A DNA stretch of 64,000 nt, taken from positions 98,084,001 through 98,148,000 of the forward strand of contig NC_043000.1 of NCBI RefSeq assembly GCF_006345805.1. Reading direction: 5' to 3'. This stretch comes from Octopus sinensis. Taxonomy: Eukaryota. The notes under the pieces are model-generated. The model was not told the DNA's origin and did no database searches. It saw only the letters and a list, made by a program, of their open reading frames with translations. A program made the translations under genes and the position numbers. This document shows positions 10,527-56,766 of this stretch, one piece after another; within the stretch, counting starts at the first letter, position 1, and each line of letters starts with the position of its first letter.

Positions 10527-10564
<38 letters not shown>

Positions 10565-10692: not shown

Positions 10693-10735
<43 letters not shown>

Positions 10736-13965: not shown

Positions 13966-14069
13966 TGATGTACTCTGTATGTGTGTAGTTTGTCTCTCAC
14001 TGCTTGATAATTATTGATGGTTTGTTTATTTCCCTCATATCTAAGCAGTTCAGTAAAAAGAAGAAAATA

Positions 14070-15819: not shown

Positions 15820-15864
<45 letters not shown>

Positions 15865-19586: not shown

Positions 19587-19628
<42 letters not shown>

Positions 19629-19974: not shown

Positions 19975-20167
19975 ATTTGGGCTTCTCCAGTTATTTTTAG
20001 TTCCTACAGCTTCATCTTTCCGAATGCACTTGGGACAAGAAGACAATATAATTGATCCCCCACTGACAGGGCTCATGACCTTATTATATATATTTTCACC
20101 AATATTCTTATTCTTCTCTGCTTCAATCTTGTCAAAGGATGTCTCAGTCTTGTCAACAAATTTCCTG
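19975..20167 (+). CDS. NEF1-like exon A (xFGLLQLFLVPTASSFRMHLG...VLSTNFL)
   Basis: Acceptor ttatttcttttcag|A and donor CTG|gtatgt. Starts in phase 2, ends in phase 0. Confidence 0.85.
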
Positions 20168-23100: not shown

Positions 23101-26100
23101 ATGCAGCAAATGTTGAGTACTCAGTAACCTAAGGTATGTGAACTGAAATAAGGAATAGAAGGTAGAGCAATAACAGTAGAAGAACCAAAAGTGAGTAGCT
23201 GAGAAGGGCTAGAGAGTAAATGTAAAGAGTACTCAATAACCTACAGCATGTACATTTGCTCAGATGGTTGAGGTAGAGAAGAGGGGAAGGAGGGATAATA
23301 TCACAAGGACCAGGGTGGCTGGGTGAAAGGAGCAGGAGTATGATGGAAAAGACAGAGGTGGTGGTTATTTGGTCAGTAGGGGTTTGATTGGCAATAACCT
23401 TAGCCTTTGACAACAGGAATGTTCTGGATGACAGATAAAGCTAAAGATATTTTTTTTTCATGTATGGTTTGACTAATATAGACTCCTCCTCAGTATTTGT
23501 GTACAACTGTTTGTCAACTGTTCTACTTTTCAGGTGTTTTTAATCCTCTTTTATTTATCAGTTGTATGTTTAACCTTTTAGCATTTAAACCAGCCAAAAT
23601 ATTCTATCCATTTTACGTTCAAACTGGCCAGATCCAGCCTCTCACACCTACCCTACACTATCATTCTAAAAATAAGCAATCACATCATTGAAATCTCAAA
23701 GCTACAAGATAATGCATGATTAACTAAAAGGAATATGAATAAATGATCAATACATTTAACAGAGTAATATGAATGCTGAAGGGTTAACATTATAATACAT
23801 ACCTTTTTTTATGTTTGTAAACACTAATTTTTTAATGTAACCTCTCTTCTCTTCAAAAGCACAAGTGTATTCTCCACATTAAAGTGTCACTCACATATCC
23901 GAGGTATATGGTGCAGTTGCTGTTACAAATGCAAATATTCCAAGTCACACTCCAAAATTACACTGCTCATTTGTTTGATTGTTGCACCCTCACTCAGAAA
24001 TAAGCTACAACTCATTGATACATTGTGTCCCCTGGTATCACTACTACTGCCGCTACTTCAATGGTAACTTCTGTATTAGAATTGTTGAAAATTATTTTCT
24101 GCTCCTGTCTAATCCTACCTCATTGAACTACCATGCCTCTTCTTGACCCTGTTATGGTTTGCTCCTCACACAAAGCATCTTCACTAACACTTGAAAACTT
24201 AATCTAAATAGTTATTCCCAGAACAGCAAAAGCAGCAAAACACTATTCCTTGGAACACTTTACTTGCTTATATCTTTTCTATAACCATTCAACAATAAGC
24301 AGTTCAAACTTAACCTGTCTTTGAGCGACTGCATATTTACTGATATTACTTTTCCTCATCAAGCTGTGACACTCTATTCCTTGTATGGCATTATTTTCTC
24401 TTTTGCTTTTACTCTGCACCCTCCTCCTCCTCTTCCTCCTCCTTCTTCTTCTTATTATTATTATTCCTGAGACTTGTTTATTTAACAGGTTGAAATGGTG
24501 TTTGTTGTCAGTGCCAGCATATTCCTAGCAACCCTTCTTCCAATCAGGCAGTTCACAGAGCATTTAGGTAAGTATGCCCTTTTCAGTCTATCATCAGCTC
24601 TTCAAACTGCTCTGTTTCATGCAGGGTGCGCTAGTGTTTCTACAGAACTTAGCTGTAGTTTTTTTTCCATAGAAATCTAGATTTCTTCCTCTGCCTTTAG
24701 GGAGATGTTTGCTCAGATCTTCTTCTTTTGAGATGCTACCCACTTGCTCTTCCTATTGAGTTGCCAGCCTTAGAACAGCCACAATCAATGTCAGCACAAT
24801 GAAATGTAGGTCTGGAGAGATTGTTGAAATGCTAGGAACCAAGCATGTAGATGTGTGCAAGAAGCAAGATGAAGAGAAGCCACTGCCAGATTTCTCAATG
24901 GCAAGGAACAAAGATTTATATTCATCTGGGTTGGTAATAGTGATGAAGGTGAAAGGCTTGGGCATTCTTTTGGCAAGGAAATGGGTAGATAAAGTGATTG
25001 GGGTAACGGGAATGTACAATAGGATAATGAAACTTAGACTAGTCTTGGAAAATTAACAGCAACATTTATCACTGTATATGCTCTTCAATCAGGACTCGTA
25101 GATAAGCAAATGGACCAATTTTACCAAACCTTTTTGTAGATTACCTTGGTAACAAATAACAGTGACTTTAACAGGCATGTTGGCAGCACCCCAATGGATT
25201 CTATGATGTACGGGGGGTGGCTAAGGCTTTGGTTCTAGAAATTAAGAGGGAACAAGTCTCTTGGAGTTCTGTGATTCATATAATCTGATGATCTGCAATT
25301 GCTGACTTTGAGAAGTCAGCCAGTCACTTGGTCACCTTTTAATCTGGTTTGTGTACAAGATGGATTGATTACATTTTCACTGGAAAATGGGATAGACAGA
25401 CTCTCATAAATGCAAAGTCCTTCCCAAGTGAAGAAAGTACAATCCAATATAGGTTAATGGCTAGAGACTTCAGACTTAGACCTAAAAGAACTCGGAGATA
25501 CGAACCAGTCAGGAAAAGGAAATCACAGCAGAAATTTAGAGAAGTACTAATTGAAGCATTTGACATTAGAGGAGGAGGAGATAGAGTTGTAAAATGAAGA
25601 GGAGAACTGGAAGAGTGATGGCCCAAATCTGTGGCTAGTACAAAGTACCAGCAGACCAAGAGTGATCTAGTGGTGGAACAGTGTAGTAGACAGAATCATG
25701 TCATAAAAGCAAAGAGAAGGTTTGGAAGGACTGAAAAGATGGGGGCAGCAAAGAATTATATCAGGTAGCTAAAAAAAAAAAAGTGGTGGTAGGTGTGCAT
25801 AGCAAGGCATAAAGTAGAAAGTAGGAGTTTTGCTAATGTTATACAGTGAGAGGATTAGAGGCTTGAGGTGTCCTAATTTGTAAAACTGTGTATCAGAAAG
25901 AACCTACACTAGCATTTAGAGATTCTGAAAAGAAAGGCATGGAAGTGCTATATTGAAACGCTATTAAATGTAGAGAATGTGTGGGAGAAAGAGGGTCTTC
26001 CCAACAGGATGATCAGCTAGCTTAGTCAAAGCAGTATATGTATAAAGCAATTAAGGATATGAAGGCAAGTAAAGCTCCTGGTCCATCAGGTATCACTGAG

Positions 26101-31315: not shown

Positions 31316-31352
<37 letters not shown>

Positions 31353-34300
31353 GAACACAAAAAAAAGAATAAAACCCTGATTCATCAGAATAAGTGTAGA
31401 TAAATTTGCCAAATTTTTATTTTATTTTTTTTTTTACCAAAAACATGTTTACAATTACATCTGTAAAATATAATGGAAAGCTCTCTTCAAGGCATTTTGT
31501 ATGTTAACTCCTTTCTCTATGTCTACTTTCACAGGAATTTCCTACCAGCAGGTGGTTCGGCTGAGATGGCTAAGTGGCATGATTACAACACTCCTTTGTT
31601 ATCAAATCCTGAATTACTATGGGCTTACATCGCATTACCTCCCTTGGCTGCCAGCTGGCATTGCAGCACATGTTGCTTTTGGAGTTTTTCTCAGTAGCAT
31701 TCGATTCAAGGTAAGCACCCTACCTACTTACCTACCTGTCTACTTATACCAGTGCATTATAGGAGAATGCAGTTAATTATCCTACATTCATGCATGTGTG
31801 TATGCATACATGTATACACACACACATACTCACTTATAATCATTTTACATATATGTATGTATGCATGATTATGTATATATATATATATATATGTTTTTTA
31901 TGGTGCACATGTGGATATATATTTTTATATATACTCATATTCATGTATGCATATTATTCTGAACACATTCTTATTTCCTCAATGAGGCTTCATTGTTAAT
32001 GCCAATACAATTGTTCATTAAGATAGATAGAAAGTGGGGGTACAATGAAAAGATTTGGTGCCTAACACAGCAGTCTTGTATAAGGATTTAATGCTAGTAA
32101 ATTCTTCATACTGAACATTACTTGGCGAAATTCTTATAAATATTCATAACCTTTTTATTTATTGATTCCAAGTAATCGAAAATAAAAACTACATTGGAAC
32201 AGGATGATAAGAAAGCTGAAACTCTCTTATCTTACCTAACAGGATTAGAACACCCTTGTTTCTGTCACTAGTGGTAACTTGTCTTACATTTTAGCATCAC
32301 AAGTGCTACACAGGACATATTTCGCTGGTGTCTATGCATCATATATGAAGTATATTCCCAATTTTTTAAACCACTAGAGTGAAAAGAAAGTTTTCTATTA
32401 CTCAAAACATATAAAACAAAGGTTAACTAAAAGTCTGAAAACAAGCATGGGCATTTAGGACAAACTTATAAAAATGCTTTGTATAGGCAAAGGGTTAATA
32501 AACAAGTGTGAGCCAAAAAGGTAACCACTATGTGTTTTGCAACCAAATCTTTCTCAAATCACGCCCTGCTTTCATAAGAGAATGTGTTCCTAATTGCACT
32601 AACCCTGAATGACAGATGGGATAGAAATGGCTGGAATACCTTTTGCTAAATCAAAGCTGATATGGGGTTAATGTTCTGGCCATTGAGGTCTGCTTTGACC
32701 ACTGATACTGTGACCATGACCAGAATCTATAGGGATACAGTTATAAACTTGACAGTGACATGCCATGTGATTATTGGGATAGTACTGTATGGTTCTCTCA
32801 TAGGAATAGGCATGATGTAATTGGGAAAATATATCTAGATGTATACTGTAACTCTGCTCCATTGGAGCTAACATTGGGCTTCAGGATAACCATAATAATA
32901 GTCTAAGTTTTAAGTGAGAGACAGAGACGATAGAACTGAAAGAGGGAAAGCAGATGAGTTGAGAGAAAAACCTTTCTTGGAGAAAAGATCAAGCAGATTA
33001 AGAACAGTAAAGAATAATTACATTGACATTTCATTAGTTTACAGTGCTACATTCAAACTCTTTGGTGATATATAGACTTCTCTTATAGACTACACAAAGT
33101 CTTCAGTGGTGACCCTCAACAACACAATGTGTCCTGAGACCATGGAATTTTACTTAATGCTAAATGTCTGTTCAATCATTTAGTTTTTCTGATTTTGCTA
33201 TTGTAATTATTGTTGCTGTCATTGTTCACACTTGCATTAACATTTCTGTTATATTTATTATTAATATTGTAAAAATATTATTGTTATATTTGGGGGTGGT
33301 CATATTTTTTTTCCCAATTAACCATGTGCACTATAGTGCATGTGGTTAATTGGCAAAAAATATGACCATTCCCAAATATAACAATATCTGTATCAACACA
33401 CAATTTCACATTCAGGAATCTTGCAAAACAAATACATAAACATTTTAAAAATATTATTTTATTTATTGATCACTGTTTTTCTTCTTATTATATTTTGTTT
33501 TGTTTTCTCTTATAGAATTTCTCCCTAGCTGGCTTTGCAGGTCTTTCACTGCTTCACAGTTTCTGGATATCCAGAGTCCCCTGGTCAATTAAGTATCCTT
33601 TAACCTAATCCAACTCTCTTTGTGTGTGTGTGTGTGGATTTTGTTAGTGGCGTGATAATATGGAATGGTTGAAACTATATGTAGCAGGTTTTTATATATA
33701 TATTGAATCACAGTTTTGCAAGATACACAGCCTATCAACTATAGTTTTTCTGCTGAAAGATAAATTCCTGGAACAGAGAAGTTTGCTGTTTGATTTCCTT
33801 CCTAATGGAAATCACAGGGAATATCAACTAAAATTTGTAATATAACCATGATACTGGCAAGATTTCAAGATTTCTGCTGTACCAGTCTCTAAGTTATTGG
33901 GATGCCTTACCGCTTGTGTTTATGATATTAGAAATTATAAGCAGCAATTTGACATAAAAGAGCAACAATTATTATTTTCTGTCCCAAACTGGTACTTACT
34001 CTGTTGAATAACATTTGCATTAATATTTTGAGAATTCAATCTCAAGCTTAGTTTTGAAATCAATTGACTCAGGTGGAAGAGTGCATACCATCAACAAAAT
34101 AGGGGGGGGGGTTGAGGGTGGGGTGGGGTGGGGTTCTTGAGAACCCCAAAAAAAATTTGGACTTATCACTATAAAGCTGTTGAAACAGTTTGGAAATAGT
34201 TACTTTTTCTGCATATTACAAAAGCAAATGTATTTTCTTGTAGTAACTAGGAAGACCAAGTTAATGTTAAACCTCTGCTCCTTTGCTGCAAGATATAAAC

Positions 34301-37300: not shown

Positions 37301-39653
37301 TCTTTATAACAATGTTGATGGTATGGAAAGAAGAGACTTAGTACATGGGTAATTGCTGGTTTTCTATAAAAAGCAAAACAAAATAAAACTTGTCCTCTAC
37401 TCCAGAGAGGAACTTCTCCTGTGCTATAAAAAACAAAACAAAAACAAAACCTGTCCTCTACTCCAGAGAGGAACTTCTGTGCAGTCAACCCTCTCTGACA
37501 GTGGTCTTAAATGTAAATGTAGAAATACACACATATTTATAATCACAGTTAATCTTCCAATTAAACCAAGGAAATTATATTTTCATTGGTTTTTCAAATT
37601 ACTGATTGTTTGTCAGTTGCATTTTGTGGCTGAAGTGTCATTAATACTTTAGTGATGAGGCAAGTTTTGAACTCAGAATACATAAATCTGCAACAGGTAC
37701 TGATGCTGAAAGAGTTCTGCCAGTCCACTATCCTTGGCAATTTAATTTTTTTTTTTTTACCCTAAAAGGTTGGAAAGAAAAGCTGCTCTCAGTGGGGTTT
37801 GAAGTCTGAGTGCAGAAACTCAGAGTAAATTCCATTAAGCATTCTATCTGACACTCTAATGACTGCACCAATTTGACATTGCTTCCCAACTGCATGCATG
37901 GTTTTGGGTTCAGCTCGACTGTGTGGGTCCTTGGACAAGTGTCTACTAGTATAGCCTAGAGCTGACCAAAGCTTTGGGAGTGGATTTGATTGATGGAAAC
38001 TGAAAGAAGCCCATCCTGTACATATATATATATATATATGTATGTATATGTGTGTGTGTGTTACATATGACATTGCATGATAGTTGTGAGTGTCACTCAT
38101 GCAAGCAGTATCTTTTGTTTTCAGTCTTCTTTGAAAACATGGTCATGGGGTAAATATTACCTTACTTGGAAACAGGTGAGGGTTGGTGACAGGAAGGACA
38201 TCCAGCTGTAAAATATCTGCTTTGACAAATTCCGTCCAACCCATGAAAGTATAAGAAAGTGGAAGTTAAGACACTGCCACTGCCGCCAATGATACACCCA
38301 TATTTGTATTTATTTCTGTCTTTTCCATTTAGATTGACAGTAGTAGAGAAATTACAACCCTATGTATCCCTGATTTGTACATCAGTCCATCTAACCAAAG
38401 TAACCAGCCTCTTACTTTCAATGCTTCCTTATACCAAAATCAACAGCATGGCAAAAGTGTTTTATTTGTTCCTCATGATATTACAAATGCTGAAAACATT
38501 TGTGATGGACTCCAAACTAAAGCTGTCTGCTAAACAGGTAACATTCTTTTCAGTTACATCTCTGATGCCCTGATACTGTTGTTTCTGTTTTTTCTTTACT
38601 TTGTTTTTTCTTACGTGTTACCTCTTTGGACTTTGCTTGGTAAAATTTGCTCAAGCATGGCTACAGTCAACTGGCTGTAAACCAGTATATGAATAACAAA
38701 GAAGGAGCTATTTTCTTAGTAAGAAAATAGTTCCCACATTGAAATTTAGACATCAACTCTTTGATTAATTTTAAAGCAGTAATGGTGAAATTTGAAGGAT
38801 ATTTGGCTGTTTTTTTATCACAATTCCAACAACCATGTAGATGTTTTCTCATTGGTTTACATAATTTCAGATTGGAGCCTAATTAATTAAAATCCGTTGT
38901 TTTCAAACTAAAGGTAATAATGTTCTTATCCTCTAGATAACTGCATTACATCTAAAAACTGACAAGCATATTAAACAGTTGTTTCTCATTTCCTTTTAAA
39001 ACATTCTGCACAAGTCGTCTTATCCAGTGTCTACAGAATTTATAAAACTTTCTGTCACCTATTCATTTATGATAGGGTAAACATATCCACAAATTTGCAG
39101 GTGGTACTGTCAAATATTTCAACCTCCTTTCACACTGCACTGATATTTAATTTATTGACTTCAGAAGGATGAAAGACAAAATTTAACTTTTTACACAAAG
39201 ATTTTTATCTACACATCTACTGATTCTGAGGCTACCTCAGTTGCCTAGTCTAATCAATGATATTTATGATTTCCATTGCCAGGTCACTTTGCATATTGTT
39301 GGTGTAAGTTTGACATGTGCCTTAAATGTAGAACCTCTACTATCAATGTTGTGTTATTACTTCATGGACAGTCAACCATCTTTGTCTGACATTACAGGTA
39401 AGTTAAACTCTTGTGGAAACTTTTTACTTCAAGTTTTGAATTTTTTCTGTAATTATACTTCTTGTTTCTAATTTTCACCCTTGAAAGATTTGTTTGCATT
39501 CTGTTGAAAAACTAATTTCCACTTCATTCATTGAAAATATTTTTGATGAATCCCACAATTCAAGTTATTAGAGCATCACTTAAGATGTCTTCCTATGGTG
39601 TATGATGTGTAAAACAATCTAATATAGTCTATCCCTCTCCAGATTATATAACT

Positions 39654-39706
<53 letters not shown>

Positions 39707-46284: not shown

Positions 46285-46325
<41 letters not shown>

Positions 46326-49300
46326 ACAGGTTTCTTTCAGTTTCTGTCTATCAAATCTACTCACAAGGCTTTGGTTGACTCGAAGCTTTAGTAAAAGACA
46401 CTTGTTCAAGGTGACATGCAGTGGGAGTGAAACTGGAACCGTGTGGTTGTGAAGTAAACTTCTTACGACACAGTCACGCTTGCGTTTATATGATAAAGTT
46501 TATAACAAAAGTCTCATGATATGAGCTAAATGTTTGACCTGTGAACTATTCCAAACAGTTTGTGTGATTTATAACTGGGACAAAAGTATCATTAAAATGA
46601 ATGACTGATTCATATAAGGTATATACTACAAATGTCACCAGCAGTTTCCTACAAACAAAATGTAACTGTAATTCTCAGTAGATTATTGGGTATCCCAGAA
46701 GACTGTTCTTACAAGACAAGCTGAAATACATGCAAGAAGAAAGACAAGGAGAAGTAGGATGAAATTAAAGGTAGCATGGTGTCAAAAAAATGGTTATGGG
46801 GAAACAAAGAGAAGGTTCTTGAAGTTTATAATAGTAAAAGTCCAAAATAAATGTCCCTTACAAGAAAGAGATTTGGCCTTCTGATTAAGAAGTTCATTTC
46901 ACAATCACATGTTTCATCCGACTGCACTGCACCCTAAATAACTGTCTTCTATAGCTTTGGGTCACACTTTTGAGTAACATTGGGTTGACAGGCCTGTTGG
47001 ATGGACTCTACCTGTTCTTAAGTAGTAGATGTGATCCATTGTTTGGTTTAACACTATAACTTATCCCTTAGGTGCCTTTAGTGGGGTCAACTCACTCAAA
47101 ATATTAACCTGGAGATAATAGAATATTATGATGTGCTATTTCTTGCGAAAAAATTCCTCTGAGTGGCAGTTTCTTTTTCCTTTGGCTAATTTGTAAAAAT
47201 AAAATGTGGTTAAAATAATAAGAATGCTAGTTGAGCTGGTGTTTGAAGAATTTGAATACATTGCTTATATTTATTGTTTATAATAGGGCAAGGAATTTCA
47301 GATTTGTCATAAAGTCTCAGTGTTAGGGTTAGGGTTTCAAAAATCATGATTCTTGTTATCAAACATTACAAGCATCACTTCTTTGTATAATATTGTATTT
47401 TGCTCTCATGGTCATGGATTTCAGCTCCCACCCACATCAAAGGTATATGGTAGAGGATAGATTGGCAGAAGTGACAGATCAACACCAATGTTAGAAATTT
47501 GTAGCTGTGCCAGTGACATGTAAAAGCACCTGTGCTGGTGACACATAAAAGGCACCTACTACACTCTTAGGAAGGGCATCTAACCAGAGAAACCAAGCTG
47601 AATTTAGACTGGAATCTGGTGTAGTTCTCCTGCTTACCAGTTCCAGTCAAGCCATCTAACACATGCCAGCATGGAAAGCAGACATTAAATGGTGATGATG
47701 ATTTGTTTAACTGAAATAATCACTTCCTAAATCTGTTGAAGTTCGTATATTTGGAATGTTTATGAGAAGCAAGTGTACTAGAAGGAAAGTCAAAATGACC
47801 AATAGATAGGAGAGAGAATTAAGAGATTGTGTAGAATTTGAAAATTCTTTTACATTTTTTTCAATCAGCTGGTGTATTGTTTTTAAGAGCAATAAGCTGA
47901 AAATACTTCGTCAGTATTTGCTAAAATATTTCTTAAGCCTACCACCATTATTTGCCAGATCTCAATGATTGTTTTTCCAATAACAGAAGGCAGAATTTGA
48001 ACATTGGATGCACAGAACTAGAAAAGATAACATAAAGCATCCTGTTTGATGCTCTCAAATTCTGCAAGTTCGCCACCATGGGCTAGTACTATATTTATCA
48101 ACCAACCCTGAAAAGATGAAAAGCAAAATTGAGTTGGTAGGATCTGAACTCAGATAGCAAAGGAACAGAACAAATATTGCAAAGCAGTGTATCTGATGCC
48201 TTTGACCACTATGTAGAATAGAGAATTATGGTCTGGATAAAGTGTACATACCTAAAGGAAAACAATAGAAACCACCTCTCCATGTCATTGAAGTCACCAC
48301 ACCATTCACAACTTGATGGCACAGAAAGAAAGTGTAATTTGAGGGAGATTTGACTGCTATTTCTAAATAGTTATTCACTCAGAAGGATGAAAGGCAAAAT
48401 TTATACTCAGAACAGAAAGGAACATAACCAAACACCACTCAATATTTTGTCCCATTTTCTTGCCTTTCCATGTCCACATATCCTCCCATCATGCTTCAGA
48501 AGCAGATATTTTGTTATTGCTTTGTAAGGATGTTGGTAGCATGATAGTTCAAATGTGAAAAGAAGCTTGGAGAAGTTTATTAAGTTTTTGCTCTTATTAA
48601 CAGACTGAGAAGTCTCAAATAGAAGGTAAATTGCAGGGAACATAAGTCATTTTAACCTCTAACTATATATCATCTGTAAACTAATTAATTGTTCTTGTAT
48701 TTACAGGTGTAATACTGATGATAACTGGTCTATCAGTAATGATACTACTCTCTATGTGCTCTGATATTAAATCCCCTGTCACCCATTCAGGCCCTTTGTT
48801 GGTATTTGTTGGTGCCCTTATTGTCTATATTCAACCCAGTTGGTCAGTCAGTTGGTATGTATATCATTATTTCATTTTATTTTTCTTCCCTTTTTCCCTT
48901 TCTTATATTTTTTCATCTATCATTGTTGTTCCTAATTGACAAAATATTTTATCTAAAAACAGCTTTCCAAAGATGAGGTTTTTTTCTCTTAAACACATAG
49001 ACCTTATATCTACAAATTTACATCTCTACTTCTCCAAAGATAGTTACTCGCTTCAAATATTTAGGCATGTCATAAGGTATATTTATATTTCAACCATTTT
49101 TATTGACTCAGACTAGAGAAACAGATTGCATGGACGTTTTGATAAGTGATAGATTTGGAGAAGTGAATGAGATCAAGGGTATTTGGAGTGGTTATATGTC
49201 AGTCCGAACACATGAAGACTGCAAAACTAATTGATGCAAAGATCTGAAGGTTGCAAAAGATTTGATTTCTGCACTGGCAGCATCATTATAGGAAGAACAT

Positions 49301-52300
49301 GAGAGTCAAGAAGAGTTATGAGCATTGAAGTCACTAAGGTTGATGATTTCATAGAAGGGTGAGTTGAGATAGATGTCTTTGATACAGGAAGAGATATGGC
49401 CAAAAAATTGTTGATGGTTGGACCGCGGAGATAAGGAGTAAAAAATTTGTCTCAAAGAGGAAAAGAATGTGCAACTTGTTTGTCAGAAGTGATGTGTGAA
49501 GTATAAACTGGATCAGAGACTGGTTATCAACCCCAGTGAAGGGACAATTGTCCAATGAGTTTAATGTTATAGTTTTTCTGTTTGAATTGCACAACTGTTT
49601 GAGATATTAGTCTGACAAAGAGTAAGCCTTGGTACAATCTCTGTGGTGGCTCATCTGCTAGATTTGAATGCCAAATTTCTTTCTAAAATCACACCTATAA
49701 ACTTAAGGGAAGGTACATTGGAGATTTTGTATATCAGAGACAGCATAGTACCTGATACATACAAAGTTTGGATGGACATATCTCTTTGGTCACATGCATT
49801 GTGGGTCTTCTTAGTCAGAGAGGGCTTGGGATTAAACAGTTGCAACAACAACATATACCAATAGTAATATATTGGGTTTAATTCAATCAACTATATTCAT
49901 CACATTTTACAACTATAGCAATTGGAATTTGGGCCTTGCCAAAAATAATTGAATTTGTTAGCTATGTTAATTTCTTACAAAGGCACAAGGCCACAGAGTG
50001 TATACATAATTTAGAGAATGTTGACCTAAGTACTTGATCAACATTTTATCTTATCACCCTCTGGAAGGAAGAAGATCAAAGATTACTTCTGCAGGATTCA
50101 AATTCAGAATATAACGGAGTAAAACTAAATCCTGCAATGTATTTTGTCTTGTGATTTCTCAATCCTACTGAGCCACCTCCGTAAATTTATTGAATATATT
50201 GATTTCTAATGTAGACATAAGACCTCACATGTGGGGAGTGAGATATAACTGATTATACCATACCAACCTTGGTACTTAACTGATACTTTAATTTATCATT
50301 CCTTCTCTTTAAAAAAATGGCTCTCTTTGTGAGATTTTCAGTCTAAATTTGTTGATATATTATCAATGTACTTGATAACTTTTTTTGTTTTGCTTGTTTT
50401 TCAACAATAGTTTTTAAAAAAATTTTTGTCCAATATATATGCTTAGCCCTTTATCTTTTTCTTACTTTTCAACAACAGGCTGTCTGTCTTGCAGTGGGGA
50501 AATATTATCAGTGTGCTGTGTATGGTGCTTCTCTTTTTATACACCAAGCCACTACCACTTGCTGTCGTTATGTCAATATCAGCTGCCATCTCTGTATGTC
50601 CAACTTACAGTGTTATCATGCAAAAGGTAAGATCATAGCAGGAATGGGAATAAGACACATACACGCATATACTCGGATAAACACATACAAATAAAGTAAA
50701 CTAGAACTTGAGCTGCATTGATGAGTATTCAGTTATGCAATAAACTGAACTGCCTACTTATTTGTGCTATACAGTTAGTGGTTGAGTATTCCATAGATGC
50801 TTGTGACTTTAATATAATCCTAAGGTTGAATCAGTGTAACACAGTGTGTGATACAGTTGACCCTTTCAACTGCAGATAAAATCCATCAGATAGGCTTCCA
50901 AATAGTTTCCATCTGTCCAGCTTCACTTACAAATCTTGGATCTGGTCAGCTTGAGGCTATGGTAGAAAACATTTGCCCAAGATGCTTCATAATGGGATTG
51001 AACTTGGGACTCCATTGGTTGCAAAGTAAGCTTCTTAATCAGCTGCAGAGCTGAGGAAGACCCAAGGCAGTGTGTGAGCACAAGGCAGAATGAGAGAGAG
51101 ACATACATACAATACAAACATAAATGAACACATTTCATATTGTGCGAAAATGTTGTTTTGGGAAAATGAGAAATTAAGTCTGAAGAAAGTGCAAAATATA
51201 TTGTCTTCTAAAGCATGAAAGTGTTTGAAAACCTAAAAAGTTAATATATCTTGTTTCTCTGTATGTTTTATCAACAGTTTTACATCAGAACCAGCTTAAG
51301 TGAAGGCTTACACCTACTCTATATCCTGATATGTAGTTGTGTTCTCTCTTTTATCACAACTGTCGTCAAATGGCGAACTGCTGGAAAATCCTTTGAGAAG
51401 AATATTTCTTTTCTGTAAGTATTACACAGAAATTCCTTCTTTCTGCAACCTGTTCTTTGCTTGGGAATTGTATTTTTTTTCTCTTTAAATAACTAAATAC
51501 AGAAGTATAGCAAATACTAAATGTTCTTTAAGAAAATTGTGAATATCACTTGATTTCTGCTTTTTGTTATTTTAATATTATTTTATTCTGTATTTGTTGC
51601 TGCTGTTTTACCTAAGATCATCCCCTATTGAGTTAATCCATGATCAAATATGTTCGGGCTGTGATCATTTTGGTTTTGTTTAAGATATAATGTGTCTAGG
51701 TCTACATTATTCTGGTTTCACATGTCAACTTCATTTTCTAAGATGGAAGGTATAATTTGAGTGAGATTTGGCTGCTATTTGCTTTTTTACTGATTGAGGA
51801 ATCGCTTAGAGCACTCTGTGTATGGAAGCATGTATGTTGTGCAAGTACTGTAAAATTCTTGATCCAACTCTGCTACACAAGCTTGATTGCTATTTTACTT
51901 CAGTTGTTATCTAGTCCTGATTCAGTTGAATTATAATAAAATGTATTCCAGTCCTGACCGTCTCGTCTTTTTGTTTTCAGGTATAGTGTATATGATCTAT
52001 CATTTATTTAAATTAGTGCTAACACATTTAATGCAGGGAGCATCGAAAAGTTAGCTAAAAATATGTAGGCTATGGTTTAATATAGTTTTCAGGTTTAACT
52101 AAGTAAGGGAGATAACTCTAGACATCCTCTGCGTCTTTACAGTTTTTAATGATAGATTCTTTTGTTGGCTGCTATAGAAGAGATAGAGAGAAACAGGAGA
52201 AGGGAGGAGAGAGAGGGGAATAGCTCATCTGCAAGCTAATTAAAGTGGATTGCCAGAATCTTTAGTAATCAATTGAATGGCTTTCTTTTGAGGGTTATCC

Positions 52301-55300
52301 AGGAGCAACTGAATCTGTGGTGAATTATTTTCTGGGTTCAGAGACAAATCTCTCTCTTTTGCAGAATTTAAATATTTTACTGCATATAGCAAGGAATTGA
52401 TACTGTTGAATATTTTCCTGAATTTAAGAGATTGCTTTAAAGTACCTGTGACATGTGGAAATGAATGGTAAAACAAAAGCATTCCAGTAATGAATAGACA
52501 CGTGATAAGAATGGATTATGTATGTTAGGAAAAAGCACACTGTAATAATTTATTAGAGGCTAGCTAAGAAAAGGCAGGAGGACGTGAGTTTGTTTGAATC
52601 CAATTTTTAAATATTGGGTTTCTCTGATGATAAGAATATCATAGAAACCATGCCTATATGAAGAAATTTTGTAGCATGAACACTTAAATGATAGTGAAAA
52701 TAATTTATTAGTGTCAAATACTTTAGTGACAGAGGCTTAAAACCGTGTGATGTTCACACTTTTTTCTCCATGGATTAACAATGTTGCTGAGGAGAAATGG
52801 TTTTGCGGATTAACAGTGTAGCTGAAGAGGAATGGCTTTGTAAAGAAACTGAAAGCAGTTCATGTACTAGCTTTCAGGCATTTTGTTTCACTCCTGCAGT
52901 TTCCATCCATAATGATACTTACTTAAGCCTTTCACATCTATGTTCTCAAATCTGGGATGTCTTTTTTGCTTCTTTTATGTTCAATCTCTACTTTTTCAGC
53001 TCACTATTGGTCTCCAACCTTCAGCTATTTTTAGAGTGTCCTCTCTTCCACATCCTAATGGTCAGAAGGCATTGTCGGCTTTGTACCTTCTTTTCAGCTT
53101 TTGCTGCACTATGTTAACTGTTTCCTTGAAGGAAGGCCTTCCTCTCTCAGATCTTGTTGGCTTTGAATCATTATCAATATTTCTGTAACTTTGCATTTTT
53201 CTTAATGTTGGCCCTAGAGGTAATCATCCCAAGTAAACCTATTTTTACCTCCAGGAAGTGGTGGTCAATATTAATCTGTCCTCTATCCTTTGACTTGCAT
53301 TTTGTTGGCATAACTCTCAGGTTCATTGAGTCATACAAGTTACCACACTACAGCAAGGACTGGACCTTGTATGACATTATAATGCTGGTAATTATAATTA
53401 TTACTATGATGATTTGTTCCAGAAATTAATATATTTTCTTAATCACTCTTCTTACAGGTGTAGTTGTATGGCAGTCTTTGGTACTTTAATCATTGGATTT
53501 GATTACTTTACAATCACTTCAGAGAACTTGACTTACAGAGCATGTTGGCAGGTGCTAAGTTTTTCTGGTTGTGTTGTCAGCATCTCACTTCGTCTCATTG
53601 GAAACAAAGTTAAGGTAAATAAGCTAAATAAATTTTATTTTACAAAAAGAAAATAAATAAAATTAAATATTTGTTTACTGGATATATTTTGATGGGGTCA
53701 GGTGTGCCACTTTTCAGGGACCTGCAGTCTAATTTCATTTTGTCTAACCAGAACAGAGAAGGTGAATTCTAATTTGCTCGATCTCCATTAGTTTCAACAA
53801 AGAGTGTTTCAGTTGTTTAACCAACTGAATTACCTGCTCGTTTAATTAGCATGTATATGGCTGAGTATTCCACAAACGCTTGTTCCCTTAACCCTTTTGT
53901 TACCATATTTCTGTTGAGATGCTCTTGTTGTTTTCAATTAATTTTAAATACAACAAAGAATTTAGTAAAATAACTTAGTCATCATTAAGCTAGTGTTAGG
54001 AACATGAATTGTGACTACAATCTGGTGGAAGATTTTAATTCAGAACTTTTGAAAACAAGACATTTGTGCTATAGTGCCACACACACACACTACTTTGGAT
54101 GAATGTCAGTGCCTTTAGATGAGTGCTAGACCTGCTAGAAGTAGCAACAAAATCTCCCTTAAAACACATGCTACTCTCCAGTCATGGCTGGAGCATCATT
54201 GTTCATAAGTCTGCTGAATCAGGACAGAGCTGGAGTTAAACAACACCACCACCTTAGCAACAACCTGTCCATGATTTTCAGATGTTTTGAAGAATATTCT
54301 CTGTCATGCCAAATCGCAGCCTACTGGTAAATGCACACTACATATACTTTAATTATATGTGGTCAATAGTGTTTATTACATTAATGCTGCTTCTATATCA
54401 TATTTAAATTTATTCTTGTGTATGCATTGTTGGGGCATATCAGCACATAGTTTTTACACCATATGAACATAAGGCTTGGACTGGCAATATGATTCATCTC
54501 TGATTCAGTTTGGGTAAATGATGTTGATAAACCACAAAAATGGTAAAACATCAATGTCCATTTCTCCTGGATGGGATTTGAGGTGAGTTATCACACCTGT
54601 CCATGACTTCAGGTGTTTTAACATCCACTACTTTGAGATAGTATTCTCCACCACACCAAATAGAAGTCAACTGGCAAATACACAAATTATATACGTTAAG
54701 TATATGTGGTTAATAATGTTTATTGCGCTAGTGTAGCCTCTATTTCACATTTAAATAACACTTAGTATATTTTGACAAACTATTTTCATTTTTGTTCTAT
54801 TTTCTCTTTTTCAGCAAGAAATATTGGTCAATGAGACAAATGATAAATCTTATCCATTACTTCCCATTCTTGGAAATATAGCTGCCATTGTTTCTTACCT
54901 TGTTCTTTGCATGCTGTCACCTGCTACTGGCTTCTTAAGAGATGTTTGGGTAAGATTATTATTGTTGTTGTGTCCACAATATGAGCAACTGATCTATCAA
55001 CCACCAAGTGTCCCACAAACTTTATTTTCCACATTAAATTCTGATATTATCTACATTACCTGAAAGATATCTAGAAAATGTTCTCTATAAAATAGCCTTT
55101 TTTATGAAAGTTATGAGGAAGTAAAATTTGGTGTGTGAATTATCTGAAACTCTTCCCATCACTTCTGACGAAAATTTTCACAACAAATTCCAATTTAATC
55201 AGAATCTACACTGCCCGAAGCAATATTCTGGAAAATTTCACCAAAAAAATATCCATTTTTCAGAAAGTTATGAGGAAACAAAGTCAGTGACATGCACACT

Positions 55301-56766
55301 CGTCTAGTTATGCTTGACTTTTTTAGGTAGTACTAGCCACACTTTTCATACCCTGGGTTTGTCAGTCATGGTCTTAGCAAACTAGATAGTGACAACAGTC
55401 TCCTGGTTATAGGTTTTATTCTGAAATGTCTTTCTAGATGGATAACCTGACAGGGCTACAGGCCCCTGATATCCAAGTTTTGTGTCAGAATTATTCCTCT
55501 CTTAGGCTGTTTACCAACCATGGCTGACAAATTCAGCCTATCCATCCGGTTATATTCCTTGATACTATTACACCATGACATTGCTAAAATTGCCAAGAAG
55601 GCTGAGGGTGTCTTGGCATCACTTACCAAATCCTTTGTGAGCCGCTCTCCGGCTATCTATCTGAGGTGGAACCTCTATCTTGCCCAGGATATTAATTGTC
55701 TGGAAACCGTTCAGCGACATGCAACCAAGAGAATACCTTCCATCAGGCATTTGCTATATTCTGAACGCCTTACTTCCCCGGGCATGGATACATTGAAATT
55801 CCAACATCTGGCAGCTGACTTGGCAGACACCCATAAAATTATTAACCATCTTACTAACACCAGGTTTTAAAAAAATAAGTACTGGGGTTGATTCATTCAA
55901 CTAAAAATTCAAGGTGGTGCCCCAGCATGGCTGCAATCTAGTGACTGAAACAAAACAAAAAAAAACGATAGCTTCTGATATTACAACTCCTTGGGATATA
56001 GATATGTTCATGCTGTGTTTGTTAATGAAATATTTTAACTGCTTATTAATCAAATGGTTTTAGAGACAAATTTCGTATATTCTGACCATTTGTTAATCAA
56101 ATGTTCAGCTAGAACTTTTCTAACTGTTTATTAATTGAATGTTCTGCTAGACATATTCTGACTGCTTGTTAATCAGATATTCTTATAGATGTAATCTAAC
56201 TGTTTGTTAATGTTCTTATAAATGTATACTGTCTGTCTATTAATCAAACTTTTTGACTGGCATATTCTAAATGTTTAATCAAATGCTCTTATAGATATAT
56301 TCTCTTTATCAACGAAATGTTCTTGTTATATTTGCAGTATTGTGGTGTCTCCGTCATTCTAATTTGTCTGCAGAAAGACCGTCACATATTACAGCGGTTA
56401 AGCAACAAGAACCAGACAGTCCCCACAATTTTCACAGTAGCATTCATACTTTGGATTCAAACCTTCCTTCATTGTGACATCTGGTTTACTGCTGAGCTTA
56501 GCAGCTCTATCCGAAGTGCAATGGAACTCATCATCATCTTCATCACAACACCTGTTTATATTGTCTTGTGGAGCATCCTCTGGGTTGACGAAATTCGACT
56601 GAATGAGAAACTGGTCATCTTCCTTATGCCCCTTAACTCTCTGCTCTTTCTAGTTGGCAGCACTTACACTGCATGGGCTTTGGGTGCATTTGGCATATTT
56701 TCTGGTGTTTGGATGATGTCATACAAATTACCACTGGAAGTGGACACTGTGTATGAAGACTCCTGA
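19975..56766 (+). CDS. Multi-exon gene (14 coding exons found, 5' end missing) for a polytopic membrane protein, NEF1 (NO EXINE FORMATION 1)-like
   Basis: Exons 19975-20167, 24489-24567, 31535-31710, 33516-33592, 34632-34780, 36662-36758, 38333-38537, 39283-39397, 48707-48854, 50479-50626, 53000-53184, 53458-53614, 54815-54949 and 56338-56766 sum to 2293 nt. All junctions are GT-AG with matching phases and join into one stop-free frame of about 763 aa. The family call rests on recalled similarity to plant NEF1 and is less certain than the gene model. Confidence 0.88.
20390..20875 (-). mobile_element. RTE LINE 3' end with internal tandem repeat of about 65 bp
   Basis: (CAT)n then cgtttaatgtccgctttccatgctagcatgggttggac is the reverse of the RTE tail. 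About five gtgccaccggcac units follow. Confidence 0.75.
21185..21413 (-). mobile_element. TTAA MITE family M1, complete copy
   Basis: Begins TTAAccctttcaataccaacccggctg and ends aatatggtaacaatgggtAAA. Imperfect terminal inverted repeats CCCTT..WTACCA. Confidence 0.75.
23570..23787. mobile_element. TTAA MITE family M2
   Basis: TTAAccttttagcatt ... aatgctgaagggTTAA: 12-bp imperfect TIRs inside intact TTAA on both sides, 218 bp. Confidence 0.75.
24489..24567 (+). CDS. NEF1-like exon B (VEMVFVVSASIFLATLLPIRQFTEHLG)
   Basis: Acceptor ttgtttatttaacag|GTT and donor TTAG|gtaagt. Phase 0 to 1, bridging exons A and C. Confidence 0.85.
24720..27305 (+). mobile_element. Heavily decayed near-full-length RTE LINE (APE plus RT)
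   Basis: APE fragment GLGILLARKWVDKVIGV...IMKLRLVLEN (24799-25056) and IDYIFT motif (25349). RT relics at about 26250-26700 (RGIKLLDQ, ELMYADG). C-terminal relic ends near 27300. Confidence 0.85.
31535..31710 (+). CDS. NEF1-like exon C (ISYQQVVRLRWLSG...FLSSIRFK)
   Basis: Acceptor tctactttcacag|GA and donor AAG|gtaagc. Phase 1 to 0. Confidence 0.88.
33516..33592 (+). CDS. NEF1-like exon D (NFSLAGFAGLSLLHSFWISRVPWSIN)
   Basis: Strong acceptor ttttgttttctcttatag|AAT and weaker donor AA|gtatcc. Phase 0 to 2 fits both neighbours. Confidence 0.8.
34632..34780 (+). CDS. NEF1-like exon E (DILFIADNIPISMLYGTIWINALL...FIVLQTA)
   Basis: Acceptor atcctttaccag|T and donor GCAG|gtaagc. Phase 2 to 1. An in-frame TAA at 34609-34611 bounds the exon start. 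Confidence 0.82.
36662..36758 (+). CDS. NEF1-like exon F (VFTSSEILLFHAKFYSSSIVLFSGLIALYLLYR)
   Basis: Acceptor ttatttcttttcag|TT and donor ACAG|gtaaac. Phase 1 to 2. Confidence 0.87.
37870..38265 (+). mobile_element. SINE with family-1 head and RTE-like tail
   Basis: Head ...gggttcagctcgactg...ttggacaagtgtc, (TA)n body, and tail aggaaggacatccagctgtaaaa...ccaacccatgaaag. Confidence 0.65.
38333..38537 (+). CDS. NEF1-like exon G (LTVVEKLQPYVSLICTSVHLTK...KLSAKQ)
   Basis: Acceptor tgtcttttccatttag|A and donor CAG|gtaaca. Phase 2 to 0. Confidence 0.87.
39283..39397 (+). CDS. NEF1-like exon H (VTLHIVGVSLTCALNVEPLL...QPSLSDITG)
   Basis: Acceptor tttccattgccag|GTC and donor ACAG|gtaagt. Phase 0 to 1. 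Confidence 0.88.
42594..43162 (-). mobile_element. Internally deleted mariner (569 bp) with both 30-bp TIRs
   Basis: Left TIR ttgggttgtctggaaagttcgtaccgattt and right TIR (reverse complement) ttgggttgtccggaaagttcgtgccgattt differ at 2 positions. TA follows the right end. ORF 42667-42939 contains LPHLPYSPDIAPSNFHLFRSLQN (YSPDLAP motif). Confidence 0.93.
43647..44147 (+). mobile_element. Complete non-autonomous Helitron (501 bp)
   Basis: A|TCtatatatataaaa at the 5' end, subterminal hairpin CCCG-agcaacgc-CGGG at 44120-44135, and CTAG|T at the 3' end. Confidence 0.88.
44637..44875 (+). mobile_element. SINE family 3 (central cctttcatcctttcggggtcgataaa.taagtacc domain), young copy
   Basis: aaggcggcgagctggcagaatc...gagttcaaattc... 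Homologues at about 11440-11600, 35450-35570, 41790-41990, 57110-58560 (several) and 62137-62345. Confidence 0.85.
46040..46480 (-). mobile_element. Family-1 SINE (minus strand)
   Basis: Reverse complement of head, (CA)n body and tail. Confidence 0.8.
48707..48854 (+). CDS. NEF1-like exon I (VILMITGLSVMILL...GALIVYIQPSWSVSW)
   Basis: Acceptor ttcttgtatttacag|GT and donor TG|gtatgt. Phase 1 to 2. Follows a 9.3-kb intron. Confidence 0.87.
49050..49720 (-). mobile_element. Old LINE endonuclease (APE) relic
   Basis: Minus strand fragment TPNTLDLIHFS resembles the APE NTLDL motif. Otherwise highly decayed. Confidence 0.4.
50479..50626 (+). CDS. NEF1-like exon J (LSVLQWGNIISVLCM...SVIMQK)
   Basis: Acceptor cttttcaacaacag|G and donor AAG|gtaaga. 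Phase 2 to 0. Confidence 0.87.
53000..53184 (+). CDS. NEF1-like exon K (LTIGLQPSAIF...PHPNGQKALSALYLLF...SLSIFL)
   Basis: Acceptor ctactttttcag|CTC, with an alternative in-frame start at 52928, and donor CT|gtaact. Phase 0 to 2. Confidence 0.78.
53458..53614 (+). CDS. NEF1-like exon L (CSCMAVFGTLII...SLRLIGNKVK)
   Basis: Acceptor cactcttcttacag|G and donor AAG|gtaaat. Phase 2 to 0. Confidence 0.87.
54815..54949 (+). CDS. NEF1-like exon M (QEILVNE...LLPILGNIAAIVSYLVLCML...RDVW)
   Basis: Acceptor tttctctttttcag|CAA and donor TGG|gtaaga. Phase 0 to 0. Confidence 0.9.
55520..55865 (+). mobile_element. CR1-clade LINE RT C-terminal fragment
   Basis: ORF LAQDINCLETVQRHATKRIPSIRHLLYSERL...ADLADTHKII matches the CR1/L2 pattern VQRRATK.IP.LR.L.Y.ERL. 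Confidence 0.8.
56030..56320. repeat. Degenerate tandem repeat of about 38 bp (about 8 units)
   Basis: Recurrent ttaatcaaatgttc..tagacatattctgactgtttg units end just upstream of the terminal-exon acceptor. Confidence 0.75.
56338..56766 (+). CDS. NEF1-like terminal exon N (YCGVSVILICLQKDRH...VDTVYEDS*)
   Basis: Acceptor ttgttatatttgcag|TAT, then 142 codons and TGA. This is the longest clearly non-repetitive ORF in the track. Confidence 0.92.
   Translation, partial: YCGVSVILICLQKDRHILQRLSNKNQTVPTIFTVAFILWIQTFLHCDIWFTAELSSSIRSAMELIIIFITTPVYIVLWSILWVDEIRLNEKLVIFLMPLNSLLFLVGSTYTAWALGAFGIFSGVWMMSYKLPLEVDTVYEDS

What the first reader, a model, noticed from the sequence alone, without database searches (positions are those of the whole stretch)
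19975..56766. Hidden 14-exon animal gene resembling plant NO EXINE FORMATION 1 (NEF1)
Seen: 14 short hydrophobic exons spread over 37 kb splice into one stop-free frame of about 763 aa, with all 13 phases matching. The ORF track shows them only as fragments. From my memory of Arabidopsis NEF1 (a polytopic membrane protein linked to tapetal lipid accumulation and pollen exine), segments occur in the same order: FLVPTASSF vs FAIPRVSSF; W...PWSIN vs W...YWDLN; ALIVYIQP vs FILMQP; LPILGNIAAIVSY vs MPxVGNVATxMxF; VILICLQKDRHIL vs ILLLLNQDSDLL; ELIIIFITTP vs NLALLILTAP; LMPL...ALGAFGI vs TVPL...VLGVLGI. Inference: this may be an unnamed animal member of an ancient membrane lipid-handling family with patchy distribution. 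I do not recognise a named vertebrate or insect orthologue.
Basis: partly seen in the sequence, partly recalled or inferred. Interest (0 to 1): 0.82.

Follow-up and report, generated by a model that had tools for sequence, protein, structure and literature searches.

The report
Octopus relative of plant NEF1
The window holds the last 14 exons of an annotated but unnamed octopus gene for a large many-pass membrane protein, and profile comparisons show it is a distant, full-length relative of the plant pollen-wall protein NEF1, which the literature treats as plant-specific.

Summary
Fourteen + strand exons between 19975 and 56766, all with canonical AG/GT sites, splice into one stop-free frame of 747 aa ending at TGA 56764-56766. 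It is not a whole gene. The first exon enters in phase 1, and the product equals residues 188-932 of Octopus sinensis XP_036358150.1 (LOC115211136, "uncharacterized protein"). That gene spans about 156 kb, so the N-terminal exons lie upstream of the window.

The NEF1 interpretation is supported, but only at profile level:
- A profile of the animal family scores plant "No exine formation 1" proteins at 118-151 bits, against 6.7 bits or less for 1001 shuffled or reversed controls.
- Profile-profile comparison gives probability 99.9%, E = 6.8e-37, over 865 colinear columns.
- Pairwise search finds nothing (about 17% identity).

Named relatives are all "uncharacterized" proteins of molluscs, a brachiopod, annelids and echinoderms. 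There is no Pfam domain. An AlphaFold model (pLDDT 81, about 34 helices) has no PDB fold match. Biochemical function is unknown; a lipid-handling transporter role is inferred only from the plant mutant. I rate it a new animal member of a known family, of moderate interest.

The parts
19975..20167 (+). Coding exon (first in the window, not first in the gene). It enters in phase 1 and encodes ..FGLLQLFLVPTASSFRMHLGQEDNIIDPPL.., which carries the family-invariant P-x-x-S-S-F motif.
   Evidence: Acceptor tttcag|, donor |gtatgt. tblastn to P0001 residues 196-252. Motif aligned to plant FSIPRSSSFK.
24489..24567 (+). Coding exon (VEMVFVVSASIFLATLLPIRQFTEHL).
31535..31710 (+). Coding exon (ISYQQVVRLRW...HYLPWLPAGIAAHVAF...).
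   Evidence: Strong splice sites. 78% identity to P0001 residues 278-340.
33516..33592 (+). Coding exon (NFSLAGFAGLSLLHSFWISRVPWSI + 2 nt). Uses the donor AA|gtatcc.
   Evidence: The conserved W of LPW requires this donor rather than the one 9 nt upstream.
34632..34780 (+). Coding exon ((N)DILFIADNIPISMLYGTIWINALLCL...). The canonical acceptor ccag| gives WSINDILF, as in the O. vulgaris annotation. O. sinensis RefSeq reads WSIKLF, which is 6 nt shorter.
36662..36758 (+). Coding exon (FTSSEILLFHAKFYSSSIVLFSGLIALYLLY).
38333..38537 (+). Coding exon (LTVVEKLQPYVSLICTSVHLTK...), containing the conserved H-x-T-K.
39283..39397 (+). Coding exon (VTLHIVGVSLTCALNVEPLL...QPSLSDIT).
48707..48854 (+). Coding exon (VILMITGLSV...ALIVYIQPSWSVS), containing the Q-P-x-x-x-L-S-W motif shared with plant LFILMQPPIPLSW.
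50479..50626 (+). Coding exon (LSVLQWGNIISVLCMVLLF...).
51278..51414 (+). Coding exon (FYIRTSLSEGLHLLYILICS...KNISF).
53458..53614 (+). Coding exon (CSCMAVFGTLIIGFDYF...RLIGNKVK).
54815..54949 (+). Coding exon (QEILVNETNDKSYPLLPILGNIAAIVSYLVLCM...DVW), containing the nearly invariant G-N motif. Phase 0 in and out.
   Evidence: Best acceptor in the region (score 10.1) and donor gtaaga. Aligned to plant MPAVGNVATIMCF.
56338..56766 (+). Terminal coding exon (YCGVSVILICLQKDRHIL...LMPLNSLL...YEDS*), with stop TGA at 56764-56766. It holds the invariant D (CLQKD), P (ITTPVY) and P (MPLN).
1..19974 (+). Part of the intron upstream of the first exon in the window. No match to the N-terminal 190 residues of orthologues. 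Filled with microsatellites and interspersed repeats.

Best explanation
Window 19975-56766 (+) is the 3' portion of the octopus gene annotated as LOC115211136. It holds 14 coding exons encoding residues 188-932 of 932. The window sequence matches Octopus sinensis best.

The product is an all-helical polytopic membrane protein with about 25-30 membrane-spanning helices. It has a disordered acidic N-terminus and no known domain. It belongs to a conserved family of 'uncharacterized' proteins of about 900-1000 aa. Named members come from molluscs, a brachiopod, annelids and echinoderms.

That family is a remote homologue (about 17-20% identity) of plant NO EXINE FORMATION 1. The match is colinear and near full-length. 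All of this is shown here.

The following is inferred, not shown. The protein sits in an internal (non-plastid) membrane and acts as a transporter-like or lipid-handling factor. It would use the few polar residues that are invariant from plants to animals in or next to its helices: E151, R288, K464, N766 and D804 (octopus numbering). Loss of plant NEF1 reduces lipid and sterol-ester accumulation in tapetal plastids. The family is most simply explained as an ancient eukaryotic gene kept in some marine invertebrate phyla. No vertebrate, arthropod or nematode protein appeared among the 20 hits whose names I looked up.
For: - Gene model: canonical splice sites and a stop-free 747-aa frame. Colinear tblastn to P0001. 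744/747 identity to XP_036358150.1 and 745/747 to O. vulgaris CAI9721200.1.
- Expression of the orthologue: a 3173-nt run-assembly contig from a public sequencing run (Logan, SRR21372853) carries an uninterrupted 932-aa ORF.
- Family: 82 HMMER hits, 12 with E < 1e-30.
- NEF1 homology: E = 2.5e-36 in a 5.8-billion-protein search. hhalign probability 99.7-99.94%, E down to 6.8e-37, 840-865 columns. Scores of 118-151 bits against 6.7 or less for shuffled and reversed controls. A profile limited to the window part scores 49-74 bits against 8.2 or less. The reciprocal plant HMM scores 59.7 bits against 3.2 or less.
- Conserved columns across 38 plant and animal sequences.
- Architecture: AlphaFold2 mean pLDDT 81.2, pTM 0.66, about 34 helices.
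- Plant phenotype and 'plastid integral membrane protein' label: PMC3220415 and PMC12346373.
Against: - Function is unsupported by any direct test here. There is no Pfam family, no PDB sequence match and no PDB fold match (best E = 0.058, TM 0.19 or less). 'Transporter' rests on topology and conserved polar residues only.
- Single-sequence search does not connect the window protein to NEF1. The narrow plant HMM scores the window-encoded part at about 0 bits.
- The plant protein's own localisation and activity are predictions in the literature.
'Lost in vertebrates and ecdysozoans' is an absence among the 20 hits whose names I looked up, not a proof.
- No octopus RNA evidence was seen directly.
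Confidence: 0.88

Rival explanations
1. The resemblance to NEF1 is chance or compositional similarity between two long hydrophobic proteins, not homology.
For: Pairwise phmmer of the window protein against eight plant NEF1s cannot be told apart from shuffles. The plant-only HMM gives about 0 bits on the window-encoded part. Identity is only about 17-20%.
Against: The animal profile scores real NEF1s at 118-151 bits. Reversed, block-shuffled and globally shuffled NEF1 controls keep the composition (the block shuffles also the local hydrophobicity), and all score 6.7 bits or less. Four colinear segments cover the protein end to end. hhalign gives E = 6.8e-37 over 865 columns. The reciprocal plant HMM scores 59.7 bits against 3.2 or less. 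Short polar and proline motifs align in register.
Confidence: 0.02
2. The animal genes come from horizontal transfer from a plant or alga into a marine invertebrate lineage, rather than from the common eukaryotic ancestor.
For: Distribution among the named hits is patchy: molluscs, a brachiopod, annelids and echinoderms. No vertebrate, arthropod or nematode was seen among the 20 looked up.
Against: Members occur in both protostomes and deuterostomes. They are only 24-34% identical to the cephalopod reference sequence across phyla, which implies an origin at or before the bilaterian ancestor. Plant-animal identity is only about 17%. The octopus gene has at least 14 spliceosomal introns, spans about 156 kb and has the host's AT-rich composition.
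Confidence: 0.06
3. The locus is a decaying or unexpressed gene copy (pseudogene) whose open frame is fortuitous.
For: No octopus transcript contig was retrieved here. The 90% cluster of the octopus protein holds only genome-derived annotations. The exon 4/5 junction differs between the O. sinensis and O. vulgaris annotations.
Against: The frame of 747 codons across 14 exons has no stop and all splice sites are intact. Identity is 98-99.7% among three Octopus species and 87% to Argonauta, and the changes listed for Argonauta are mostly between similar residues. A full-length run-assembly contig for the orthologue exists in a public sequencing run.
Confidence: 0.03
4. The protein is not a transporter. 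It is a membrane-embedded enzyme, or a structural or membrane-integrity scaffold.
For: No similarity to any transporter superfamily in Pfam or the PDB. No internal repeat or inverted-repeat symmetry was detectable by sequence. By my own recollection of Ariizumi et al. 2004, which I did not read here, the original plant paper suggested a role in keeping the plastid envelope intact.
Against: Nothing tested here separates these options. The conserved polar residues in or beside helices fit either an active site or a translocation path.
Confidence: 0.4

Closest known systems
Plant NO EXINE FORMATION 1 (NEF1, Arabidopsis At5g13390 and orthologues)
   Same: Homologous over almost the full length: 865 aligned profile columns, E = 6.8e-37. 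Same all-helical polytopic build with no accessory domain. Shared motifs in the same order: DPG-F-x-N-x-R before the first helix, P-x-x-SSF, (P/F)W-x-L, QP-x-x-x-LSW, P-x-x-GN, (Q/N)-x-D and MPLN.
   Different: Only about 17-20% identity, not detectable pairwise. The plant proteins are about 1100-1150 aa and carry extra segments, roughly plant residues 337-410, 700-730 and 830-930, that the animal proteins lack. NEF1 is described as a plastid protein of the tapetum (PMC3220415), and animals have neither plastids nor tapetum. The function of the animal protein is untested.
Octopus sinensis LOC115211136 (XP_036358150.1) and its orthologues: O. vulgaris CAI9721200.1, O. bimaculoides LOC106878824, Argonauta hians
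   Same: The window product is 744/747 identical to residues 188-932 of XP_036358150.1. This is the same gene.
   Different: RefSeq reads WSIK-LF at the exon 4/5 junction. The window's only canonical acceptor gives WSINDILF, as in the O. vulgaris annotation. The window lacks the exons for residues 1-187.
Uncharacterized 900-1000-aa proteins of other invertebrates (Haliotis LOC124140327, Patella LOC126809748, Biomphalaria LOC106058692, Lingula LOC106174833, Owenia, Capitella CAPTEDRAFT_227730, Acanthaster LOC110985436, Anneissia LOC117118745)
   Same: Clear orthologue-level family, with E from 1e-62 down to 1e-16 from a single-sequence search. Same length and colinear.
   Different: 24-36% identity. 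None has a name, a domain or a described function.

Membership tests
NEF1 (NO EXINE FORMATION 1) family | Statistically significant sequence similarity to bona fide NEF1 proteins, above compositional controls | tested here: met
   Animal profile against 8 plant NEF1s: 118-151 bits, with 1001 shuffled or reversed controls at 6.7 bits or less. E = 2.5e-36 in the 5.8-billion-protein search. A profile limited to the window part scores 49-74 bits against 8.2 or less.
NEF1 (NO EXINE FORMATION 1) family | Colinear alignment over most of the protein with the same polytopic all-helical architecture | tested here: met
   hhalign gives 840-865 aligned columns, plant 80-1131 against animal 49-941. The AlphaFold model has about 34 helices. 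Both proteins show about 27-30 hydropathy peaks.
NEF1 (NO EXINE FORMATION 1) family | Reciprocal detection: a model built only from plant NEF1s recognises the octopus protein | tested here: met
   The full-length O. sinensis protein scores 59.7 bits (aa 18-258), with controls at 3.2 bits or less. Other animal members score 12-69 bits. The window-encoded part alone (aa 188-932) scores about 0 bits with this narrow model, so for the window fragment by itself this criterion is not met.
NEF1 (NO EXINE FORMATION 1) family | Conservation of residues that are invariant among plant NEF1s | tested here: met
   In the 38-sequence plant and animal alignment, F37, E151, P159, P358, D804, P862 and P888 are invariant (R8 also appears invariant, but it lies in the poorly aligned, low-confidence N-terminus). 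S200, S201, F202, R288, K464, P592 and N766 are at least 90% conserved. All lie in motifs that are also invariant in the plant alignment.
NEF1 (NO EXINE FORMATION 1) family | Detectable by ordinary pairwise search (BLAST or phmmer level) | tested here: not met
   phmmer of the window protein against plant NEF1s gives nothing above the shuffles. This limits it to a remote (superfamily-level) member. It is not an orthologue in the annotation sense.
NEF1 (NO EXINE FORMATION 1) family | Function: needed for lipid or sterol-ester accumulation in an organelle, with plastid envelope location | not testable with these tools
   Known only from the Arabidopsis nef1 mutant, as cited in PMC3220415 and PMC12346373. 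No animal data exist in the searched literature.
Any Pfam family or solved-structure family | Match to a curated domain model or a PDB fold | tested here: not met
   Pfam gives no family for 10 full-length members. PDB sequence search gives 0 hits. Foldseek against the PDB gives best E = 0.058 and TM 0.19 or less, all to soluble solenoids or GPCRs.

The most novel reading that the evidence does not exclude
NEF1 is not a plant- or plastid-specific invention. It is the plant branch of an ancient eukaryotic family of about 30-helix membrane proteins whose fold has no match in the PDB. Several marine invertebrate phyla retain it, and it was not seen in vertebrates, arthropods or nematodes among the hits I could name. 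If so, its core activity (perhaps neutral-lipid or sterol handling in an endomembrane) predates plastids. The plastid assignment of NEF1 would then need re-examination, and invertebrates would offer a second system in which to find the activity.
Probability: 0.35. Interest if true: 0.62.

Novelty: new member of a known kind. Interest (0 to 1): 0.5.

Why it matters
Since 2004, NEF1 has been described as a 'novel plant protein' and an 'unknown plastid integral membrane protein'. All 19 papers in the searched library that contain the phrase 'no exine formation' are plant studies. Full-length homologues in octopus, snails, bivalves, a brachiopod, annelids and echinoderms would have three consequences.

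1. They give a family assignment to proteins so far labelled only 'uncharacterized' in those invertebrates.
2. They argue that the family's core activity does not depend on plastids or on pollen walls.
3. They point to a large membrane-protein fold with no solved relative.

None of this yet says what the protein does, and orthology databases I could not consult may already group these proteins.

Tried and rejected
- The word-indexed search with the last-exon ORF found nothing, although identical annotated proteins exist. I put this down to the index, not to absence.
- Pfam on exon peptides and on full-length members found no family.
- PDB sequence search and Foldseek against the PDB gave no usable match. 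The top hits are soluble alpha-solenoids and GPCRs at E > 0.05, and I reject them as noise.
- My first automatic chain picked a donor 9 nt upstream in exon 4, giving ..SRVP|C... I rejected it because it removes the conserved W of the LPW motif. It also picked several spurious fill-in exons (20581-20655, 24701-24789, 27520-27641, 34982-35059, 37253-37320, 38125-38175, 51904-51980, 52878/52900-53060, 53259-53320). I rejected these because they have no counterpart in orthologues.
- I searched window 1-19974 for the N-terminal exons and found none.
- Rfam and tRNA scans of the window found nothing.
- A self-comparison of the family profile for internal repeats found none.
- Pfam on transposon-like ORFs in the introns gave no hit at E of 0.01 or less.
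- I considered the idea that this is a complete gene and rejected it, because of the phase-1 first exon and the 156-kb annotated span.
Full report
**1. What is in the window**

The window is AT-rich (32-40% G+C). It is full of microsatellites and interspersed repeats and has no tRNA or Rfam match. It looks like an animal genome. A bacterial-style ORF list shows the region only as fragments.

I scored every AG and GT on the + strand with generic metazoan splice-site weights. I listed open exon candidates and chained them under phase consistency. A robust core came out whatever penalty was used: 19975-20167, 31535-31710, 39283-39397, 48707-48854, 50479-50626, 54815-54949 and the terminal 56338-56766. 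The fill-in exons were uncertain.

**2. Relatives and the final gene model**

I joined the core exons and searched them with HMMER against 1.84 billion representative proteins. This gave 82 hits, 12 with E < 1e-30. The best was P0001, 932 aa, E = 9e-187.

tblastn of P0001 against the window placed its residues 196-932 on 14 colinear + strand segments with no gaps. This fixed the uncertain exons. The final model has 14 exons, and each has a pyrimidine tract plus AG acceptor and a GT donor. The 2245-nt product, read from phase 1, is a stop-free 747-aa frame ending at TGA 56764-56766.

Its length estimate of about 763 aa is slightly high. Its motif 'PWSIN' is real but spans the exon 4/5 junction.

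**3. The gene is already annotated and is only partly in the window**

A profile of 17 family members (A1) retrieved four cephalopod annotations, all 'uncharacterized' or 'hypothetical':
- Octopus sinensis XP_036358150.1 (LOC115211136, 932 aa)
- O. bimaculoides XP_052823597.1
- Argonauta hians GAB1597902.1
- O. vulgaris CAI9721200.1

The window product is 744/747 identical to residues 188-932 of the O. sinensis protein and 745/747 identical to the O. vulgaris protein.

The first exon in the window enters in phase 1. No trace of the N-terminal 190 residues exists in window 1-19974. The annotated O. sinensis gene spans about 156 kb. So the window carries the last 14 coding exons, not a whole gene.

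A 3173-nt contig assembled from a public sequencing run (Logan, SRR21372853) encodes P0001 as one uninterrupted ORF. I read that contig as a spliced mRNA of the orthologue in a cuttlefish-type cephalopod. The same 90% cluster holds a partial Acanthosepion pharaonis protein.

**4. The family**

The named members I looked up are all 'uncharacterized' or 'hypothetical' proteins of 865-1129 aa, with one exception: the Mactra antiquata entry is labelled as a pleckstrin-domain-containing protein, which looks like a mislabel. They come from:
- cephalopods, gastropods (Haliotis, Patella, Batillaria, Babylonia, Biomphalaria), bivalves (Mactra, Pinctada, Ostrea, Mytilus, Pecten, Mya and others) and a chiton
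- the brachiopod Lingula
- annelids (Owenia, Capitella, Paralvinella)
- echinoderms (Acanthaster, Anneissia)

No vertebrate, arthropod or nematode protein appeared among the 20 hits I could name. No member has a Pfam domain.

**5. Test of the NEF1 idea**

- The A1 profile search also returned one non-animal protein, Protea cynaroides KAJ4973074.1. UniRef names it 'No exine formation 1'. The score was E = 2.5e-36 and 143 bits.
- Used as a query, that protein retrieves many angiosperm proteins named NEF1 at 70-90% identity. It is therefore a bona fide NEF1.
- Profile-profile comparison of 12 plant NEF1s (A2) with the animal family gave probability 99.94%, E = 6.8e-37 and 865 aligned columns. The alignment covers plant positions 80-1131 and animal positions 49-941.
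- Long hydrophobic proteins can match spuriously, so I ran controls. The animal HMM scores eight real NEF1s at 118-151 bits. The reversed sequence, 500 block-shuffled copies and 500 globally shuffled copies of NEF1 all score 6.7 bits or less. Removing the cephalopods from the profile changes nothing.
- A profile cut down to the part encoded in the window still scores NEF1s at 49-74 bits, with controls at 8.2 bits or less.
- In the reverse direction, a plant-only HMM scores the full-length octopus protein at 59.7 bits, with controls at 3.2 bits or less. That signal lies in residues 18-258. The same narrow model gives about 0 bits on the window-encoded part alone.
- Single-sequence phmmer sees nothing.

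The relationship is therefore real, colinear and near full-length. It is remote (about 17-20% identity). Its strongest part is encoded mostly upstream of the window.

| Animal (P0001) | Plant NEF1 (P0128) |
|---|---|
| LFMVSTVSSFK | LFSIPRSSSFK |
| RVPWSIKLF | HNFWNLNIW |
| LLLIIQPSWTLTW | LFILLQPPVPLSW |
| MLPALGNVAAV | WMPAVGNVATI |
| VLICLQRDQRLF | ILLLLNQDSDFV |
| ELIIIFITTPVY | NAALLILTFPSH |
| FLMPLNSLL | LTMPLNLPS |

**6. Structure and mechanism**

AlphaFold2 on a 38-sequence plant and animal alignment gave a confident all-helical model: mean pLDDT 81.2, pTM 0.66, about 34 helices. Only residues 1-30 and a few short stretches are disordered. Hydropathy suggests about 25-30 membrane spans in both the octopus and the plant protein.

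Foldseek against the PDB found nothing. The best hit had E = 0.058 and TM 0.19 or less, and the hits were soluble solenoids. PDB sequence search was empty. No internal sequence repeat was detectable.

Across plants and animals the invariant or nearly invariant residues are mostly prolines and glycines, plus a few polar residues in or next to helices: E151, R288, K464, N766 and D804. That pattern fits a translocation path or an active site better than an inert scaffold, but it does not say which.

The only functional data are from plants. The nef1 mutant lacks normal primexine and has reduced lipid and sterol-ester accumulation in tapetal plastids. The protein is described there as a plastid integral membrane protein or transporter (PMC3220415 and PMC12346373).

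My working hypothesis is that the octopus protein is an endomembrane transporter-like or lipid-handling protein. This is inference by remote homology only, and I put it at roughly 0.3-0.4. The identity of the locus and its family relationship I put at about 0.9.

**7. Origin**

Members occur in both protostomes and deuterostomes and are only 24-34% identical to the cephalopod reference sequence across phyla. The octopus gene has many spliceosomal introns and host-like composition. Plant-animal identity is about 17%. Together these favour an old eukaryotic gene with lineage losses over recent horizontal transfer.

**8. Novelty**

The locus itself is already annotated. None of the 19 papers in the searched library that contain the phrase 'no exine formation' concerns a non-plant organism. 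The literature calls NEF1 a novel plant protein. I could not consult PANTHER, InterPro, eggNOG or OrthoDB, which may already group these proteins.

I therefore rate it as a new (animal) member of a known family, of moderate interest. It is a sound and somewhat surprising remote-homology link, and it opens a second experimental route to an uncharacterised membrane-protein family with no solved relative. It gives no mechanism yet.

Noticed in passing
window 33585-33594 and 34626-34641: At the exon 4/5 junction the only canonical splice (AA|gtatcc ... tttaccag|T) gives ..PWSINDILFIAD.., exactly as in the O. vulgaris annotation. O. sinensis and O. bimaculoides RefSeq proteins read ..PWSIKLFIAD.. 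(6 nt shorter). In this window that reading would need a non-AG acceptor (AT at 34636-34637). The cuttlefish-type contig (L001) also encodes K-L. The cause could be an alternative acceptor, a polymorphism or a model artefact.
   Followed up: partly
window 23836-24000 (+), compared with P0127: The O. bimaculoides RefSeq model XP_052823597.1 lacks the conserved exon that corresponds to 19975-20167 and carries the invariant P-x-x-SSF motif. In its place it has ..QKYKCILHIKVSLTYPRYMVQLLLQMQIFQ... That sequence matches an intronic open frame at about 23860-23990 in this window. It is probably a mis-predicted exon in that annotation.
   Followed up: partly
window 16879-17274 (+), 26038-26190 (+), 55520-55870 (+): Intronic ORF fragments that look like relics of non-LTR retrotransposon reverse transcriptase. 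Two are related copies (17105-17185 and 26039-26119, 81% identical, encoding ..APSPSGITAEMLK.. and ..APGPSGITEEMLK..). The third is a C-terminal-like piece (..LETVQRHATKRIPS..YSERL..). Pfam gave no hit at E of 0.01 or less for the two I scanned (16879-17274 and 55520-55870), so the resemblance rests on my own recognition only.
   Followed up: partly
window 42667-42939 (-): A 90-aa ORF (..LPHLPYSPDIAPSNFHLFRSLQNSL..) resembles the C-terminal part of a mariner/Tc1-type transposase. It lies in the 9.3-kb intron. Pfam gave no hit at E of 0.01 or less.
   Followed up: partly
window 11433-11611, 35426-35570, 41791-41904, 44637-44816, 57374-57708, 58339-58518, 62134-62351; also 1435-1533, 9434-9606, 13575-13668, 19635-19728, 37897-38059, 46307-46473, 61199-61395: Two families of short interspersed repeats (about 100-170 nt, 61-84% identical, in both orientations) are scattered through the introns and flanks. 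One contains a GGTTCAGTCCCAC box reminiscent of tRNA-derived SINEs. One copy ends about 250 nt upstream of the first exon in the window.
   Followed up: no
window 56773-56778: An AATAAA hexamer lies only 7 nt after the stop codon. Whether it is the poly(A) signal in use is unknown.
   Followed up: no
window 5890-6012, 6666-6822, 15652-15910, 19589-19640, 29075-29580, 31280-31360, 39640-39700, 46228-46335: Many long di- and tetranucleotide microsatellites, (CA)n, (CT)n, (TA)n and (TCTA)n. They produce the long 'ORFs' rich in His/Thr/Cys/Val in the ORF list. These are not genes.
   Followed up: no
P0009 (1541 aa), not in the window: One database homologue of unknown species carries an inserted reverse-transcriptase-like segment and several tandem copies of the ..GPHPLPLLKREDRR.PLVPIMGN.. 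stretch. It is probably a gene-prediction artefact that runs through a retroelement and a repeated exon.
   Followed up: no
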